The notes under the pieces are model-generated. The model ran no database searches. It was given only the letters and a program-made list of their open reading frames with translations, and was not told the DNA's origin. The translations under genes and the position numbers were made by a program. Positions 32,670-36,895 of a DNA stretch of 64,000 nt are shown here, one piece after another (position 1 is the first letter of the stretch; every line of letters starts with the position of its first letter). Source of the DNA: Selaginella moellendorffii (taxonomy: Eukaryota; Plantae; Lycopodiophyta); the NCBI RefSeq assembly GCF_000143415.4, contig NW_003314306.1, positions 652,897 to 716,896 on the forward strand. The letters are read 5' to 3'.

Positions 32670-34028
32670 TTAAATTAGCCTGTCGTAGACTTCCTGGGCA
32701 AATGGCCTGTTGCTAGCATCGTTGTCCATGCATTCTCGGATACAGGCAGCGACATCGTCAGTGTAAGAGCTGAGAAGGCTGAGTATGCTTTCCCGATGAG
32801 ACACTGCCGGATCACTGCCAAAGACTTCGGTGTTGGACAAGAGAAAGGACTTCCCGAGCTTGAGCTCCGCCATCACCACCCCCATCGAGTAGATGTCACA
32901 CTCAAAGCTGTAGCGGCCACCAGCAATGCGCTCCGGGGCCTGGTAAATCCTCTTGCGGAGCTCGTAGTGTGGATCATTCCCCGACCTCTCCCTCTCGCTC
33001 ATTTCCAGGGGATCTGCGAGGCGCGCTAGGAGGAACCCCGCGAGCTTGACTTGCAAGCTTGCGGCTTGCTGCTGGGCGACGATGAGAATGTTGTTGGAGC
33101 TGATGCTCTCGTGCACAATGTGGCACCTGTGAAGATCGGCTACTGCTGCTGCCAGGCTCAGAAGCACACTGTTGGTGACACCGGGGTCTAGTCCTCCCAG
33201 TTGCTGAAAACTGTTAGCAATCTGGAATTCCAGGGTGGTGACTGCGGACTTGGAGTGGCATCCTTCCACCCGGCTCAAAATATGATAGCTTCCATCCTGT
33301 TCGATCATCTTCTCCATCTTCACCAGGCCTAGCTCACTTGCTGGTATGTCCTGGTAGACGAGGATCAGCCTTCCAATTCGATTCAGCCTGCAAGCTTTCA
33401 CCTTGGGCGTCGTGCCAACGGGAATGGTTTCAACGAAAAACACAGACCCATCATCTGCCTCAAGGAGCCGGTCTTGGTCCTGCGGATTATAGCTGGGAAG
33501 GCCCGCCATGCTTCGGGAGTAGACATTGCTGCTGATGAGATCTTGTTTTCTGATGGGCTTGAGATTCCTGGGATCCATGATCTTCGAGATAACTTTCCTG
33601 GAGTTACTCATGCCATCTCTGCCTTTGTCCTCATTGTTACCAATATCAACAATGCCGCCCTGTGCTTGCTTGGACAAGCTGACCAAAATGTGTACAGCGT
33701 TGACCAATTTCTCGATCTTGTCTAGCTGCTCGCGGACCCTCTTTGCTGCAAACATGGATTCGTCGAGCACCTTTTGGAGCTTACACAGCCGATTGTAAAT
33801 GCGCTGGTTGCAGAGCAACAAACCTTGTTTTTGCTCGTCAGAGATCCCCTTTTGGGTTTCAGCCACTGACCGGAGCGCCTTGTAGATCTCCACAGCAAGC
33901 ACCATCCGAGCGTAGTCTTCCTGGTCGAGTCTCTCCAACAAACCCTTCACACGATTCAAGAGGTTGATGATGCTGTCGATGGAGGCGACTAGGCCAACAA
34001 CACCCGCCACAACACTGAAAGGATCCAT
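32670..34028 (-). CDS. Helical N-terminal domain plus pseudokinase (MLKL/HeLo-kinase-like architecture), intronless
   Basis: N-terminus MDPFSVVAGVVGLVASIDSIINLL followed by amphipathic helices. Kinase C-lobe HESISSNNIL (no catalytic Asp), KLAGFLLAR (no DFG Asp), YQAPE, DIYSMGVVMAEL and RP. Confidence 0.8.
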   Translation of the reverse strand: MDPFSVVAGVVGLVASIDSIINLLNRVKGLLERLDQEDYARMVLAVEIYKALRSVAETQKGISDEQKQGLLLCNQRIYNRLCKLQKVLDESMFAAKRVREQLDKIEKLVNAVHILVSLSKQAQGGIVDIGNNEDKGRDGMSNSRKVISKIMDPRNLKPIRKQDLISSNVYSRSMAGLPSYNPQDQDRLLEADDGSVFFVETIPVGTTPKVKACRLNRIGRLILVYQDIPASELGLVKMEKMIEQDGSYHILSRVEGCHSKSAVTTLEFQIANSFQQLGGLDPGVTNSVLLSLAAAVADLHRCHIVHESISSNNILIVAQQQAASLQVKLAGFLLARLADPLEMSERERSGNDPHYELRKRIYQAPERIAGGRYSFECDIYSMGVVMAELKLGKSFLLSNTEVFGSDPAVSHRESILSLLSSYTDDVAACIRECMDNDASNRPFAQEVYDRLI

Positions 34029-34066
34029 CAGGGCACTGTTCAGTAGCTAGAACTCACACTTTATCC

Positions 34067-36895
34067 CTAGTGTTTTTCCTTCTCCAGTGACTCCTTCCAA
34101 CTTCTGGCCATCTCAACATCTCGTTCAAGATCTTTGTCCCCACGGAACTTCCTCCACTTTTCGACCCCTTGGGTGTCACCCAGCGCGTAGCAGTAGCGGA
34201 AGCAGACCGCAGCAGATTGGCGGTGGTGTTTCTTCTCGGCAGCCATGGCAAAATAGTTGTAGGCTTGCATGGACACTTGCTTCAGTCCGGTTCTGGAGGC
34301 CACTAGCATTCCCATATTAAAGAGGCTATCAGCGTCAAGCTCGTCAGCAGACTTGGAAACAAGCTCGATCAGCTCCTCCCCGTCTTTGTCTTGGTAACCA
34401 GCACCCACTTGGTAGCACACTCGTGGATGCAAGCTCCAGAGTGATCGCCGAAACCAGTACTCGGCCTCGCTTGTGTACTGACGTTTCTTCTGCACGAGTA
34501 AGAACGCAAGCATCGACGCTGCTCTTTCTGCACCATAGAGCAAAGCCTGTTTCAGTACCTTCTCGGCCCCAGCCAAATCTCCTCGATAACGCAGCATGCT
34601 CGCCAGCTCCACCATGGCTAGCGAATTGCCGAGATCCATGGCTCGTTGCAGCAGCTCGAGCTTGCGTTCCACGCCTACGCCCCCACAAATGGCAAGTTGC
34701 AGCATTGCGGTGTCGTTGCCAGCTGAAACTCCCTGCTCCCACAGGCGGACTGCCATGTCATTGTCTCCCTTCTGGGAGAACTTTATCGCTTGCATGCTCA
34801 GGGCCTCGGCATCGCCCGCTTCGGCGGCAGCTCGCCACCATTCCATTGCCTTGCGTTCATCTTGGAGCCCTTGATAGAGAGCACCGATTTTTGTGACGAC
34901 ACTTGGCTCCATGTACTGCCTTTTCTCTGCGAGTATCTGGTGCCACTCGTCCGAATGGAACTTGGCAGACATATTGAAGAGAGCGTTCATAGCCTTGATG
35001 CTGACATCTCTTGATTGCCTGAATATCTCCATTCCCACTTCGTCTTCTCCCAGCTCGAGCAGACCATCCATAAGATCATACTCTACTGTCGACTTGTGAC
35101 GATGCATTCGAAAAAACAGCAGTAGCTCGTCATCGGAAGTCGAGTTGAACTTCTTGCTCAATAAAGTTCTGAGCCTTATGCAAATAGAGTTCAGCTCGAG
35201 ACGTCCTTTCCCTTGCCGGTGACTCCTTGTATTGAGGATAGAAGCTTTTATGCAGCTCAACCTGGCCCAGCCGGAAGTCATCCTCTCTAAATTAGCTGCT
35301 GCAGTGTAGAAATCAATTGCATTCGTGTTGTCACATCTCAGCTTGTACAAGTCGCCAATGAACTCAAGCAGTGCGCCGTTTCTCGACTCAGCCAAGAGCC
35401 CTGCCTTGTTAATCGTGCCTTTGACAACACTCCTGAGGATTCTCCCCAAGAGGCTCCCACCCTCGACGCTCCTCTCCAGAAACTCCATCTCTTTGGCAGG
35501 AAGCTCGCGGTAACCCGGGTTGACGGCTATGTAGAAGAGTGCTAGAAGTGCCTGTGCGTGTGCATATCCCGTCTTGGCTGCTTTCAAGAGAAGATCGAGT
35601 ACGTTCCTGTGGTTGCCATTGATCGTGGGAGCAAACTCAAGACAAGTGCTGAACATTCCGCTCCGCAAAGAATATATGTTGGCAAACTCCACTTGAGCGT
35701 ACGCGTTACCCCGGCTAGAAAGCTCTGCTAGATGATGTATGGCATCACCAATTCCCATCCTGGTTTGTATCATTGCCAGGTAGAAGTCCACAAGAGCGCT
35801 CATCAACATGTTGACACCGATCTCGTCTTCGAGCATCACAAGGCAGTCCTTGAACAGTTCCAATGCCGCCTCCCAGTTTCTTTGGCATCCGTAGCCATGG
35901 AAGTTCATGATACCCAGAAACAGCTTGGCCACTGCGCTTTCAGACGTGGTGAACACGTCAAATGCCTCCTCGTATTGTTGTTGATAGAAAAGCATCCTGC
36001 CCTGGCGGATGAGATCGGCGTTGTCACCTTCTTCGTTCTCAAGGAAAGTGTCGGTCCAGTAACACGCCAAGTTGACCCTCTCCGCCTCCCCAATGGCATG
36101 ATCAAGCAGACCTTTAAAGCTCTCGAAATCACGATCATCGCTGGAGTAAAGATGGTCAAGAGCATCAAGGACCTCATCGCAGCTGGGCCTTTCGAGTGGG
36201 CAGGAAGCCAAACACTGGACTACGATTTCAACGTCGCCGAGGAGCTCTTGCAGCACAAGGCCAAGGCTGTAGATGTCAGAGGCCAAGCGATGGTACATAC
36301 TGCCAGGAGGAGCAGCCCGTTTCTCGGGTGCCATGAAAGCCGGTGTGCCGAGTACCTCCCCAAAGTCATTGTCGCCCATCTGTCTTGCGGTGCCAAAGTC
36401 ACACAGCTTGGCCCTCAGCCCAAAGTCAAGCAACACATTGTCACTCTTGACATCCTCGTGAGCAATGCCTCTACCGTGCAGGCTGCAAAGGCCGCCACAC
36501 AAATCCCTGGCAATCACCACCTTGAGACGGCCCGACAAGCTTTGGCCGCTCGCATCCAGCAACGCCCTGAGCGATAAGTTGTAAGCGAGCTCCATGACAA
36601 TGCAGCGATCATCATCCAGCCCCGTTTGGACGCGGCCGAGAAACTGGACGACGCGGGACTCACCTTTGAGTGACCGCATCACTTCGACCTCTCTTCGGAT
36701 GCTGCTCTCTGAAACACCTCGGTTGTAGCTCTTGACTGCCACTGCTTGTCCCCTGTATACGCCTAGCCTCACACTGCCATAGCTTCCCGCGCCACATTCC
36801 ACCTCGCGGCTATCGATCTCGTAGTCATTGATATCTTCGTTGCTGTAGCCTTCCCGCAGCAGTACTATTGGGGATGAAGATGCTGAGCAGTCCAT
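34067..36895 (-). CDS. TKL-like protein kinase with C-terminal Sel1-like repeats, intronless
   Basis: GAGSYG, VAVK, REVEVM, HEDVKSDN, DFG, GTPAFMAPE, DIYSLG. Sel1 motifs AKLFLGIMNFHGYGCQRNWEAALELF, AAKTGYAHAQ, AAEAGDAEA, AMDLGNSLAM. Confidence 0.9.
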   Translation of the reverse strand: MDCSASSSPIVLLREGYSNEDINDYEIDSREVECGAGSYGSVRLGVYRGQAVAVKSYNRGVSESSIRREVEVMRSLKGESRVVQFLGRVQTGLDDDRCIVMELAYNLSLRALLDASGQSLSGRLKVVIARDLCGGLCSLHGRGIAHEDVKSDNVLLDFGLRAKLCDFGTARQMGDNDFGEVLGTPAFMAPEKRAAPPGSMYHRLASDIYSLGLVLQELLGDVEIVVQCLASCPLERPSCDEVLDALDHLYSSDDRDFESFKGLLDHAIGEAERVNLACYWTDTFLENEEGDNADLIRQGRMLFYQQQYEEAFDVFTTSESAVAKLFLGIMNFHGYGCQRNWEAALELFKDCLVMLEDEIGVNMLMSALVDFYLAMIQTRMGIGDAIHHLAELSSRGNAYAQVEFANIYSLRSGMFSTCLEFAPTINGNHRNVLDLLLKAAKTGYAHAQALLALFYIAVNPGYRELPAKEMEFLERSVEGGSLLGRILRSVVKGTINKAGLLAESRNGALLEFIGDLYKLRCDNTNAIDFYTAAANLERMTSGWARLSCIKASILNTRSHRQGKGRLELNSICIRLRTLLSKKFNSTSDDELLLFFRMHRHKSTVEYDLMDGLLELGEDEVGMEIFRQSRDVSIKAMNALFNMSAKFHSDEWHQILAEKRQYMEPSVVTKIGALYQGLQDERKAMEWWRAAAEAGDAEALSMQAIKFSQKGDNDMAVRLWEQGVSAGNDTAMLQLAICGGVGVERKLELLQRAMDLGNSLAMVELASMLRYRGDLAGAEKVLKQALLYGAERAASMLAFLLVQKKRQYTSEAEYWFRRSLWSLHPRVCYQVGAGYQDKDGEELIELVSKSADELDADSLFNMGMLVASRTGLKQVSMQAYNYFAMAAEKKHHRQSAAVCFRYCYALGDTQGVEKWRKFRGDKDLERDVEMARSWKESLEKEKH

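What the first reader, a model, noticed from the sequence alone, without database searches (positions are those of the whole stretch)
32670..36895. Kinase-Sel1 sensor plus helical-domain pseudokinase: candidate RIPK3/MLKL-like cell-death pair
Seen: two intronless genes in tandem. The first is a catalytically intact non-RD kinase (HED, DFG, APE) with a long Sel1-repeat tail. The second has an N-terminus MDPFSVVAGVVGL.. and helical bundle fused to a kinase fold lacking both catalytic aspartates (HES, AGF). Known: 'MDPLS..A.V.GL' starts are typical of fungal HeLo-like/SesA-type N-terminal domains, and a membrane-targeting helical bundle plus pseudokinase activated by a partner kinase is the MLKL logic. 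Sel1 repeats bind ligands, and non-RD kinases are enriched in immunity. Inference: a linked sensor-executor immune module unlike seed-plant NLR pairs.
Basis: partly seen in the sequence, partly recalled or inferred. Interest (0 to 1): 0.86.

Follow-up and report, generated by a model that had tools for sequence, protein, structure and literature searches.

The report
Spikemoss kinase beside MLKL-like pseudokinase
In the spikemoss Selaginella moellendorffii, an active-looking kinase with Sel1-type repeats lies 38 bases upstream of a small expressed protein built like the cell-death executioner MLKL (helical bundle plus dead kinase), so the two may form a kinase-triggered death or immune switch, but nothing yet shows that they act together.

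Summary
Two intronless, transcribed minus-strand genes sit 38 nt apart.

- **K1** (942 aa) is a TKL-type non-RD kinase (HED, DFG and APE present). Its C-lobe is about 27 residues short, and it carries a Sel1-like repeat tail.
- **PK2** (452 aa) has a hydrophobic N-terminus, a confidently modelled four-helix bundle, a linker and a pseudokinase. The pseudokinase has no G-loop, β3 Lys→Glu, HES and GFL.

PK2 belongs to a small family that I also found in a moss, a fern and one unidentified transcriptome. All members lack the catalytic residues. The family profile hits animal MLKL pseudokinases first among solved structures (E 2e-19, a narrow margin). An invariant activation-loop Ser aligns with mouse MLKL S347.

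The bundle matches Rx-CC (Z 13.2), NRG1 CC-R and the MLKL 4HB (Z 9.8). These scores are within the range of generic helical bundles. There is no Pfam HeLo, SesA, RPW8 or DUF1221 hit.

The pairing is unsupported outside Selaginella. Three fern loci have no K1-like gene within 10 kb, and the closest relative has its own 5'UTR. Neither protein has a RHIM.

The scan found the same arrangement earlier on another piece of this genome (s1-419578), probably the other haplotype.

Verdict: a real MLKL-architecture gene of a new non-seed-plant lineage. The sensor-executor pairing is plausible but unproven.

The parts
34067..36895 (-). K1 gene: 942-aa kinase with Sel1-like repeat tail, single exon
   Evidence: ORF; Pkinase E 3.7e-32; RNA coverage with no introns
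36146..36817 (-). K1 kinase domain (res ~27-250): GAGSYG, VAVK, HED (non-RD), DFG and APE. The C-lobe is short, with 45 residues from APE to the subdomain-XI Arg.
   Evidence: best solved relatives are LRRK2, CTR1, RAF and IRAK4 (TKL group)
34070..36043 (-). K1 Sel1-like/TPR helical repeat tail (res ~285-942)
   Evidence: Solved Sel1 proteins 6ork, 6deh and 6ur7 at E 2e-6 to 4e-5; Pfam Sel1/TPR below cut-off; atlas Sel1 clusters; six 'AA..G...A' cores
34029..34066 (-). 38-nt spacer between the K1 stop (TAG) and the PK2 ATG
   Evidence: RNA contigs and reads run across it, with no splice joint
32670..34028 (-). PK2 gene: 452-aa four-helix bundle plus pseudokinase, single exon
   Evidence: ORF; Pkinase E 3.1e-16; RNA depth about 3-4 times that of K1
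33657..34028 (-). PK2 N-domain (res 1-124): hydrophobic N-terminus (res 6-24, KD19 2.1), then four helices at 17-31, 36-58, 64-89 and 95-122
   Evidence: AF2 model with 5-sequence alignment, pLDDT 66-92 over res 14-124; fold matches; hydropathy
33462..33656 (-). PK2 linker or possible brace (res 125-189). It is poorly modelled; K161 and L164 are invariant in the family.
32673..33461 (-). PK2 pseudokinase (res 190-452): no G-loop, beta3 Lys->Glu200, HES (306-308), GFL (331-333), invariant Ser344 in the activation loop, APE retained
32567..37075 (-). Continuously transcribed region covering both genes
   Evidence: Depth table of two stranded RNA runs and two contig sets

Best explanation
PK2 belongs to a small, previously unnamed family of MLKL-architecture proteins in non-seed land plants (moss, lycophyte, fern). 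The family has a CC/4HB-type four-helix bundle with a hydrophobic N-terminal helix, a linker, and a TKL-type pseudokinase that has lost every catalytic and ATP-binding hallmark. I propose that the pseudokinase holds the bundle in check. Phosphorylation of the conserved activation-loop serine (Ser344) would then release the bundle to oligomerise and act on membranes, giving cell death or ion flux in immunity. K1, the non-RD TKL kinase with a Sel1-like repeat tail 38 nt upstream and transcribed in the same samples, is the most economical candidate for the activating kinase, with its repeats as the sensing or scaffolding part. Shown: gene structures, motifs, expression, the family and its range, and the bundle fold. 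Inferred: membrane action, phosphorylation, and the K1-PK2 link. My odds are about 0.8 that PK2 is a genuine 4HB-pseudokinase of MLKL architecture, about 0.5 that it acts in death or immune signalling, and about 0.35 that K1 is its direct activator.
For: ORFs and motifs. Both genes are transcribed from the minus strand without introns, with no coverage gap at the spacer. Relatives of the same architecture occur in Physcomitrium patens, Adiantum nelumboides and a Logan transcriptome, and all lack the HRD-Asp and DFG-Asp. The family profile's three best solved matches are mouse and horse MLKL pseudokinases (E 2.4e-19 to 3.8e-18). They share HxNIsS and KLAGF motifs, and the invariant Ser aligns with mouse S347; S345 and S347 are phosphorylation sites needed for MLKL function (bioRxiv 10.64898/2026.06.10.731390, abstract). 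The N-domain models as a four-helix bundle. It aligns over its whole length to Rx-CC (Z 13.2, rmsd 2.5, 101 aa), NRG1.1 CC-R (Z 10.7), mouse MLKL 4HB (Z 9.8, rmsd 3.3, 96 aa) and MLA13 CC (Z 8.9). It also aligns to an Rx_N NLR cluster in the atlas (TM 0.53). Language-model features point to fungal HeLo, PigL_N and SesA clusters. Plant 4HB-kinase proteins are experimentally shown cell-death executors, and one works with a genetically linked partner (wheat R3AK; bioRxiv 10.64898/2026.08.07.743466).
Against: No Pfam HeLo, SesA, RPW8, Rx_N or DUF1221 hit on four family N-domains. There is no sequence hit to any solved 4HB. Foldseek finds nothing at E<=1e-3, and the VIA Z-scores are in the range that generic helical bundles reach (tool note). 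MLKL's lead over other kinases in the PDB search is only about 4.6 bits (73.1 against 68.5). In the whole-library search, oomycete and amoebozoan TKL kinases score higher than animal MLKL would. Three Adiantum loci have no K1-like gene within 10 kb. The 46%-identical relative is on a transcript with its own 115-nt CT-rich 5'UTR and no K1 tail. K1 has no RHIM, is not specifically RIPK-like and lacks the alphaG region. PK2 RNA is 3-4 times more abundant than K1 RNA, with a step at the gene boundary, which suggests separate transcripts.
Confidence: 0.4

Rival explanations
1. K1 and PK2 are neighbours by accident of a compact, locally rearranged genome. PK2 is an MLKL-like protein regulated by something else (an NLR, another kinase, or nothing), and K1 is an unrelated signalling kinase.
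For: The adjacency is absent at three fern loci and in the closest relative's transcript. The coverage step at the gene boundary suggests separate mRNAs. The region carries local duplications and fragments of K1 and PPR genes. In wheat the partner of an MLKL is an NLR, not a kinase.
Against: A 38-nt spacing in the same orientation is unusually tight for independent eukaryotic genes. The same arrangement is noted on another piece of this genome (s1-419578), though that may be the allele. Both genes are expressed in the same runs at a similar ratio.
Confidence: 0.35
2. PK2's N-domain is only a generic helical-bundle scaffold or adaptor (like the FAT or Cbl-N bundles). PK2 is then a signalling pseudokinase with no membrane-permeabilising or death function.
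For: Foldseek's best matches are FAT domains at E about 0.1. Cbl TKB bundles score Z 10-11, as high as CC-R and MLKL. No sequence family of death domains is hit.
Against: The top match over the whole domain is a plant immune CC domain. The very N-terminus is a conserved hydrophobic helix with an acidic residue near the start, as in CC and HeLo-type death domains. The architecture and the pseudokinase motifs match MLKL.
Confidence: 0.15
3. The hydrophobic N-terminus is a signal peptide or signal anchor, making PK2 a membrane-tethered or secreted protein rather than a cytosolic latent executor.
For: Residues 6-24 average Kyte-Doolittle 2.1, above the usual transmembrane threshold. Residues 1-13 are modelled with low confidence.
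Against: There is no basic n-region (the protein starts MDPFS), and residues 17-31 are modelled with high confidence as helix 1 of the bundle. A secreted kinase fold would be unusual. No signal-peptide predictor was available, so this rests on rules of thumb.
Confidence: 0.07
4. The two ORFs are one gene whose exons are spliced together, as in the public gene model EFJ22079.1 ('MAP kinase, partial').
For: The deposited 243-aa model joins K1 kinase segments to the PK2 N-terminus.
Against: No splice joint links the ORFs in two raw RNA runs and two contig sets. An in-frame TAG ends K1, and coverage is continuous across the segments that the model removes.
Confidence: 0.03

Closest known systems
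Vertebrate MLKL (with RIPK3 as activator)
   Same: Order of parts: N-terminal four-helix bundle, linker, C-terminal TKL-type pseudokinase. GF(E/L) stands in place of DFG, there is an HxNIsS catalytic-loop remnant, and an activation-loop Ser aligns with mouse S347. MLKL is the best solved match of the family profile. The bundle superposes on 4btf residues 3-117 (Z 9.8). A kinase gene lies next door.
   Different: There is no detectable sequence similarity in the bundle. The beta3 Lys is replaced by Glu. The neighbouring kinase has no RHIM and carries Sel1 repeats. Homology as opposed to convergence is not established.
Seed-plant MLKLs (AtMLKL1-3; Mahdi et al., bioRxiv 10.1101/681015)
   Same: A plant protein with a 4HB/HeLo-type N-domain, a brace and a pseudokinase. 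AtMLKLs act in immunity.
   Different: That family was reported across seed plants. Its N-domain is annotated DUF1221 and it has a serine-rich C-terminal extension. PK2 has no DUF1221 hit and ends with the kinase fold. AtMLKL3 (6KA4) did not appear among the 50 best fold matches.
Poales 4HB-kinase 'MLKLs' such as wheat R3AK and Pm13 (bioRxiv 10.64898/2026.08.07.743466)
   Same: A Cbl-N/CC-type four-helix bundle fused to a kinase fold, working with a genetically linked partner gene. The bundle executes cell death. Such fusions arose repeatedly. PK2's bundle also matches Cbl TKB bundles (Z 10-11).
   Different: The partner there is an NLR, not a kinase. R3AK is described as having a kinase catalytic active site, whereas PK2 has lost all catalytic residues. 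The lineages differ (monocots against non-seed plants).
Plant CC-NLR N-terminal domains (Rx_N; MADA and MAEPL types)
   Same: This is the best fold match (Rx-CC Z 13.2; atlas Rx_N cluster TM 0.53). Both have a hydrophobic N-terminal helix with an acidic residue near the start, like the MADA and MAEPL motifs needed for CC death activity (PMC11218826).
   Different: There is no NB-ARC, no Pfam Rx_N hit, and the MADA and MAEPL profiles could not be run here.
Kinase-Sel1 proteins of Mucoromycota and Parabasalia
   Same: K1's Pkinase plus Sel1 architecture. Atlas clusters of this make-up score 0.95-0.96 by features. Kinase and Sel1-like families are expanded in Rhizophagus irregularis (PMC8647823).
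   Different: No alignment-based relationship was tested, and those proteins have no described link to a 4HB-pseudokinase.

Membership tests
Vertebrate MLKL | N-terminal four-helix bundle | tested here: inconclusive
   The model has four helices at pLDDT 66-92 and aligns to 4btf 3-117 at Z 9.8, rmsd 3.3, 96 aa. That Z is within the range of generic helical bundles, and there is no sequence hit.
Vertebrate MLKL | C-terminal pseudokinase with a degraded catalytic loop and GFE in place of DFG | tested here: met
   HES and GFL are present, with no G-loop and beta3 K->E. MLKL chains are the top three hits of the family profile (E 2.4e-19).
Vertebrate MLKL | Activation-loop phospho-acceptor used by RIPK3 | tested here: inconclusive
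   Invariant Ser344 aligns with mouse S347. Phosphorylation cannot be tested with these tools.
Vertebrate MLKL | Common descent with animal MLKL | tested here: inconclusive
   In the whole-library search the best non-family hits are oomycete and amoebozoan TKL kinases. No tree was built.
Seed-plant MLKL (AtMLKL type) | DUF1221-type HeLo N-domain | tested here: not met
   No Pfam hit on four family N-domains at E<=10.
Seed-plant MLKL (AtMLKL type) | Serine-rich extension after the pseudokinase | tested here: not met
   PK2 ends at residue 452, just after the subdomain-XI RP motif.
Fungal HeLo / HeLo-like (PF14479, PF17111, PF17107) | Profile match to the family | tested here: not met
   No Pfam hit. 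Only language-model feature similarity of 0.88-0.92, with 138-160 shared features, which the tool rates as a lead.
Plant CC (Rx_N) four-helix bundle | Fold match over the whole domain | tested here: met
   4m70 Z 12.8-13.2, rmsd 2.5-2.7, 100-101 of 107-108 residues; atlas Rx_N cluster TM 0.53. There is no sequence-profile hit.
Plant CC (Rx_N) four-helix bundle | MADA or MAEPL N-terminal motif | not tested
   The motif HMMs were not available. Only a visual resemblance of the hydrophobic N-terminus was seen.
RIPK1/RIPK3 (for K1) | RHIM motif | tested here: not met
   No [IV]Q[IVLC]G or looser match in K1 or PK2.
RIPK1/RIPK3 (for K1) | Kinase domain closest to RIPKs | tested here: not met
   The best 60 solved matches are LRRK2, CTR1, TNIK, RAF, DLK, IRAK4 and Src; no RIPK is listed.
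Sel1-like repeat proteins (for the K1 tail) | Sel1 repeat profile or sequence match | tested here: met
   Solved Sel1 proteins at E 1.9e-6 to 4e-5; six core motifs; atlas Sel1 clusters with 181-192 shared features. Pfam Sel1 itself is below cut-off.

The most novel reading that the evidence does not exclude
Non-seed land plants keep a necroptosis-like two-component switch. A Sel1-repeat sensor kinase (K1) would directly phosphorylate the activation loop of a 4HB-pseudokinase (PK2) that shares ancestry with animal MLKL, releasing a membrane-disrupting bundle. This would be the first kinase-to-MLKL axis outside animals, and it would offer a candidate answer to what activates plant MLKL-type proteins.
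Probability: 0.12. Interest if true: 0.9.

Novelty: new variant of a known kind. Interest (0 to 1): 0.6.

Why it matters
Plant MLKL-type proteins are emerging as immune cell-death executors (AtMLKLs, Pm13, wheat R3AK). What switches them on is largely unknown, and the family was reported only across seed plants. This locus extends the MLKL architecture to moss, lycophyte and fern through a separate small family. That family's pseudokinase looks most like animal MLKL among solved structures. The locus also offers a physically linked, expressed kinase as a concrete and testable candidate activator. If the link holds, it would show that kinase-gated 4HB executors are not an animal invention. If it fails, the family is still a new entry in the list of independent 4HB-kinase fusions.

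Tried and rejected
- Word-indexed homologue searches with PK2 (whole, and residues 1-190) found nothing. With the family alignment they added only one fern paralogue.
- The single-sequence AF2 model of whole PK2 was unusable at pLDDT 39.
- Foldseek against the PDB gave no match at E<=1e-3.
- The N-domain profile against PDB sequences gave only chance-level hits.
- An hmmsearch of the N-domain profile against all 167 fetched proteins found the domain only in the known family members, so no fused architectures were recovered.
- The moss locus and the public Selaginella gene model could not be fetched, so synteny in moss is untested.
- A fused-gene reading (EFJ22079.1) was rejected on RNA evidence.
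- A RHIM-based RIPK analogy was rejected.
- I could not obtain AtMLKL, MADA or MAEPL sequences or profiles through the tools, so there is no direct comparison with them.

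
Full report
**Observation**

K1 runs 34067..36895 (942 aa) and PK2 runs 32670..34028 (452 aa). The K1 stop (TAG) and the PK2 ATG are separated by 38 nt.

The neighbours are DYW-type and other PPR genes and an ankyrin-repeat gene. A public protein, EFJ22079.1 'MAP kinase, partial [Selaginella moellendorffii]', is 98% identical to parts of both ORFs. 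The window is therefore S. moellendorffii DNA.

**Expression and gene structure**

Two stranded RNA-seq runs and two contig sets cover 32567-37075 continuously. The first mates lie on the + strand, which in the usual stranded libraries means RNA from the minus strand. No splice joint was seen, apart from one weak 97-nt joint at 36565/36663 in a single low-depth contig.

Both genes are therefore intronless and expressed. The chimeric public gene model, which splices K1 kinase pieces to the PK2 N-terminus, is not supported.

PK2 depth (10-24) is about 3-4 times K1 depth (2-8), with a step at the gene boundary. Contigs cross the spacer, but the tool warns that this does not prove a single transcript. 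I read this as a separate, more abundant PK2 mRNA, possibly with K1 read-through as well. This is inference.

Many sites show about 50% alternative letters. That fits a second allele or near-identical copy.

**K1**

- Pfam Pkinase scores E 3.7e-32 over residues 33-220.
- GAGSYG, VAVK, HEDVKSDN (non-RD), DFG and APE are all present.
- The best solved relatives are LRRK2, CTR1, TNIK, RAF, DLK and IRAK4. These belong to the TKL group of kinases (classification from my own knowledge). No RIPK is among the top 60.
- There is no RHIM.
- Only 45 residues separate the APE Glu from the subdomain-XI Arg, against about 72 in PKA (PKA figure from my own knowledge). The alignment shows that the alphaG segment is absent. 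'Catalytically intact' is therefore true of the motifs but not certain for the fold.
- The tail matches solved Sel1-repeat proteins (6ork E 1.9e-6, 6deh, 6ur7, 8sxq). It carries at least six 'AA..G...A' cores and resembles Sel1 clusters by language-model features. Pfam Sel1 and TPR are below cut-off.
- By features, the kinase-plus-Sel1 architecture is typical of clusters from Mucoromycota and Parabasalia. Kinase and Sel1-like families are known to be expanded in Rhizophagus (PMC8647823).

**PK2 pseudokinase**

Pfam Pkinase scores E 3.1e-16, matching only from profile position 61 onward. Alignment with active kinases shows four losses:

- no glycine loop;
- Glu200 in place of the beta3 Lys, invariant in the family;
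- HES in place of HRD;
- GFL in place of DFG.

APE and the C-lobe are kept.

**PK2 family**

An exhaustive HMMER search of 1.84 billion representatives gave one close relative, P0001 (46% identity, full length), from a Logan transcriptome contig. It also gave two distant full-length ones: Physcomitrium patens PHYPA_020368 (P0093) and Adiantum nelumboides proteins (P0105, P0151, P0152). All share the architecture, and all lack the HRD-Asp and DFG-Asp.

The next-best hits are TKL-type kinases of oomycetes and Amoebozoa. The N-domain profile found no further carriers among the 167 fetched proteins.

**Similarity to MLKL**

A profile of the family hits mouse and horse MLKL pseudokinase domains first among all solved chains (E 2.4e-19, 5.3e-19 and 3.8e-18). 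Shared motifs are HxNIsS and KLAGF. The lead over STK33 (6.1e-18) is narrow.

The family-invariant Ser344 in the activation loop aligns with mouse MLKL S347, next to S345. Phosphorylation of S345 and S347 is described as essential for MLKL function (bioRxiv 10.64898/2026.06.10.731390).

**PK2 N-domain**

With a five-sequence alignment, AlphaFold models residues 14-124 as four helices (17-31, 36-58, 64-89, 95-122) at pLDDT 66-92. Residues 1-13 and 125-190 are poorly modelled.

| Search | Result |
|---|---|
| Foldseek against PDB | nothing at E<=1e-3; FAT domains first at about 0.1 |
| VIA-align, Rx-CC (4m70) | top match, Z 12.8-13.2, rmsd 2.5-2.7, 100-101 residues |
| VIA-align, NRG1.1 CC-R | Z 10.7 |
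| VIA-align, Cbl TKB bundles | Z 10-11 |
| VIA-align, mouse MLKL 4HB (4btf 3-117) | Z 9.8, rmsd 3.3, 96 aa |
| VIA-align, MLA13 CC | Z 8.9 |
| ESM Atlas shape search, Rx_N NLR cluster | TM 0.53, 116 aa |

The tool's own calibration says that helical bundles commonly reach Z of about 13. The fold is therefore consistent with the CC / CC-R / MLKL-4HB class but does not discriminate it from other bundles.

Pfam gives no HeLo, SesA, PigL_N, RPW8, Rx_N or DUF1221 hit on four family N-domains. Only language-model features point to fungal HeLo, PigL_N and SesA clusters (0.88-0.92).

Residues 6-24 are strongly hydrophobic (KD19 2.1), with an acidic residue near the start. This pattern is kept in moss and fern. 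It recalls the N-terminal helices needed for CC death activity (PMC11218826). That is resemblance only.

**Is the pair conserved?**

Three Adiantum loci (L001, L003, L004) have no K1-like gene within 10 kb either side. The P0001 transcript has its own 115-nt CT-rich 5'UTR with no K1 tail upstream. The moss locus could not be fetched.

Earlier notes of this scan report the same arrangement on another piece of this genome, with a 29-nt spacer (s1-419578). They also report other helical-domain-plus-kinase and kinase-Sel1 architectures. I could not inspect those loci. The first is probably the other haplotype, given the roughly 50% variants in the reads and the 98% identity of EFJ22079.1.

The pairing therefore rests on one species.

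**Comparison with what is known**

Seed-plant MLKLs (bioRxiv 10.1101/681015) have a HeLo domain, a brace, a pseudokinase and a serine-rich tail. Their N-domain is annotated DUF1221. PK2 fails two of these features, so I do not file it in that family.

A 2026 preprint shows that '4HB plus kinase' MLKLs arose repeatedly in monocots. It also shows that wheat R3AK executes death through its bundle, together with a linked NLR. PK2 fits this broader kind as a separate, non-seed-plant lineage. Its distinctive traits are the fully dead kinase, the MLKL-like pseudokinase motifs, and a kinase rather than an NLR next door.

**Verdict**

PK2 is a real, expressed MLKL-architecture gene of a new small family. 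The K1-to-PK2 activation model is the most economical hypothesis, but it is inference, at about one chance in three.

Noticed in passing
window 25212-26897 (+): A degenerate inverted partial copy of a PPR fragment followed by the 5' part of K1. It covers K1 residues ~13-171 at 75-91% aa and 82-84% nt identity and is broken into pieces. It looks like a pseudogene left by a local duplication.
   Followed up: partly
window 37307-37591 (-) and 38187-38779 (-): A short ORF upstream of K1 repeats K1's N-terminal peptide (…EGYSNEVINNYVID…). Further upstream lies a PPR fragment like the PPR gene at 28392-30170. The order PPR fragment then K1 is the same as in the copy at 25-27 kb.
   Followed up: partly
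window 36120-36157: A 38-nt stretch inside the K1 kinase region is shared with another, more abundant transcript. Many reads and contigs match only this stretch and continue into unrelated sequence on both sides (table 7).
   Followed up: no
window 36565-36663: A weak 97-nt joint with GT..AG ends on the minus strand was seen in one low-depth contig of one run. It would shift the K1 frame, so it is probably a rare or spurious splice.
   Followed up: no
window 30386-32569 (+) against 32567-32670 (-): A DYW-type PPR editing-factor gene converges on PK2. The 3' ends abut or overlap, and an unstranded contig runs from PK2 into the PPR gene.
   Followed up: no
window 36101-36330 (K1 res ~190-265): K1's C-lobe lacks about 27 residues (the alphaG region) between APE and the subdomain-XI Arg. 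RNA shows no intron there. Whether such a kinase folds and works is open.
   Followed up: partly
public protein EFJ22079.1 (P0003): The deposited Selaginella gene model is a chimera that joins K1 kinase pieces to the first 55 residues of PK2. RNA reads do not support it.
   Followed up: yes
window 39171-40730 (-) and 20016-21755 (-): An ankyrin-repeat protein (Ank_2 E 5e-49) and a divergent Hsp70-like ATPase ORF (HSP70 E 2e-10) flank the region. The window also has AT-rich stretches at 14-20 kb (GC 0.28-0.35).
   Followed up: no
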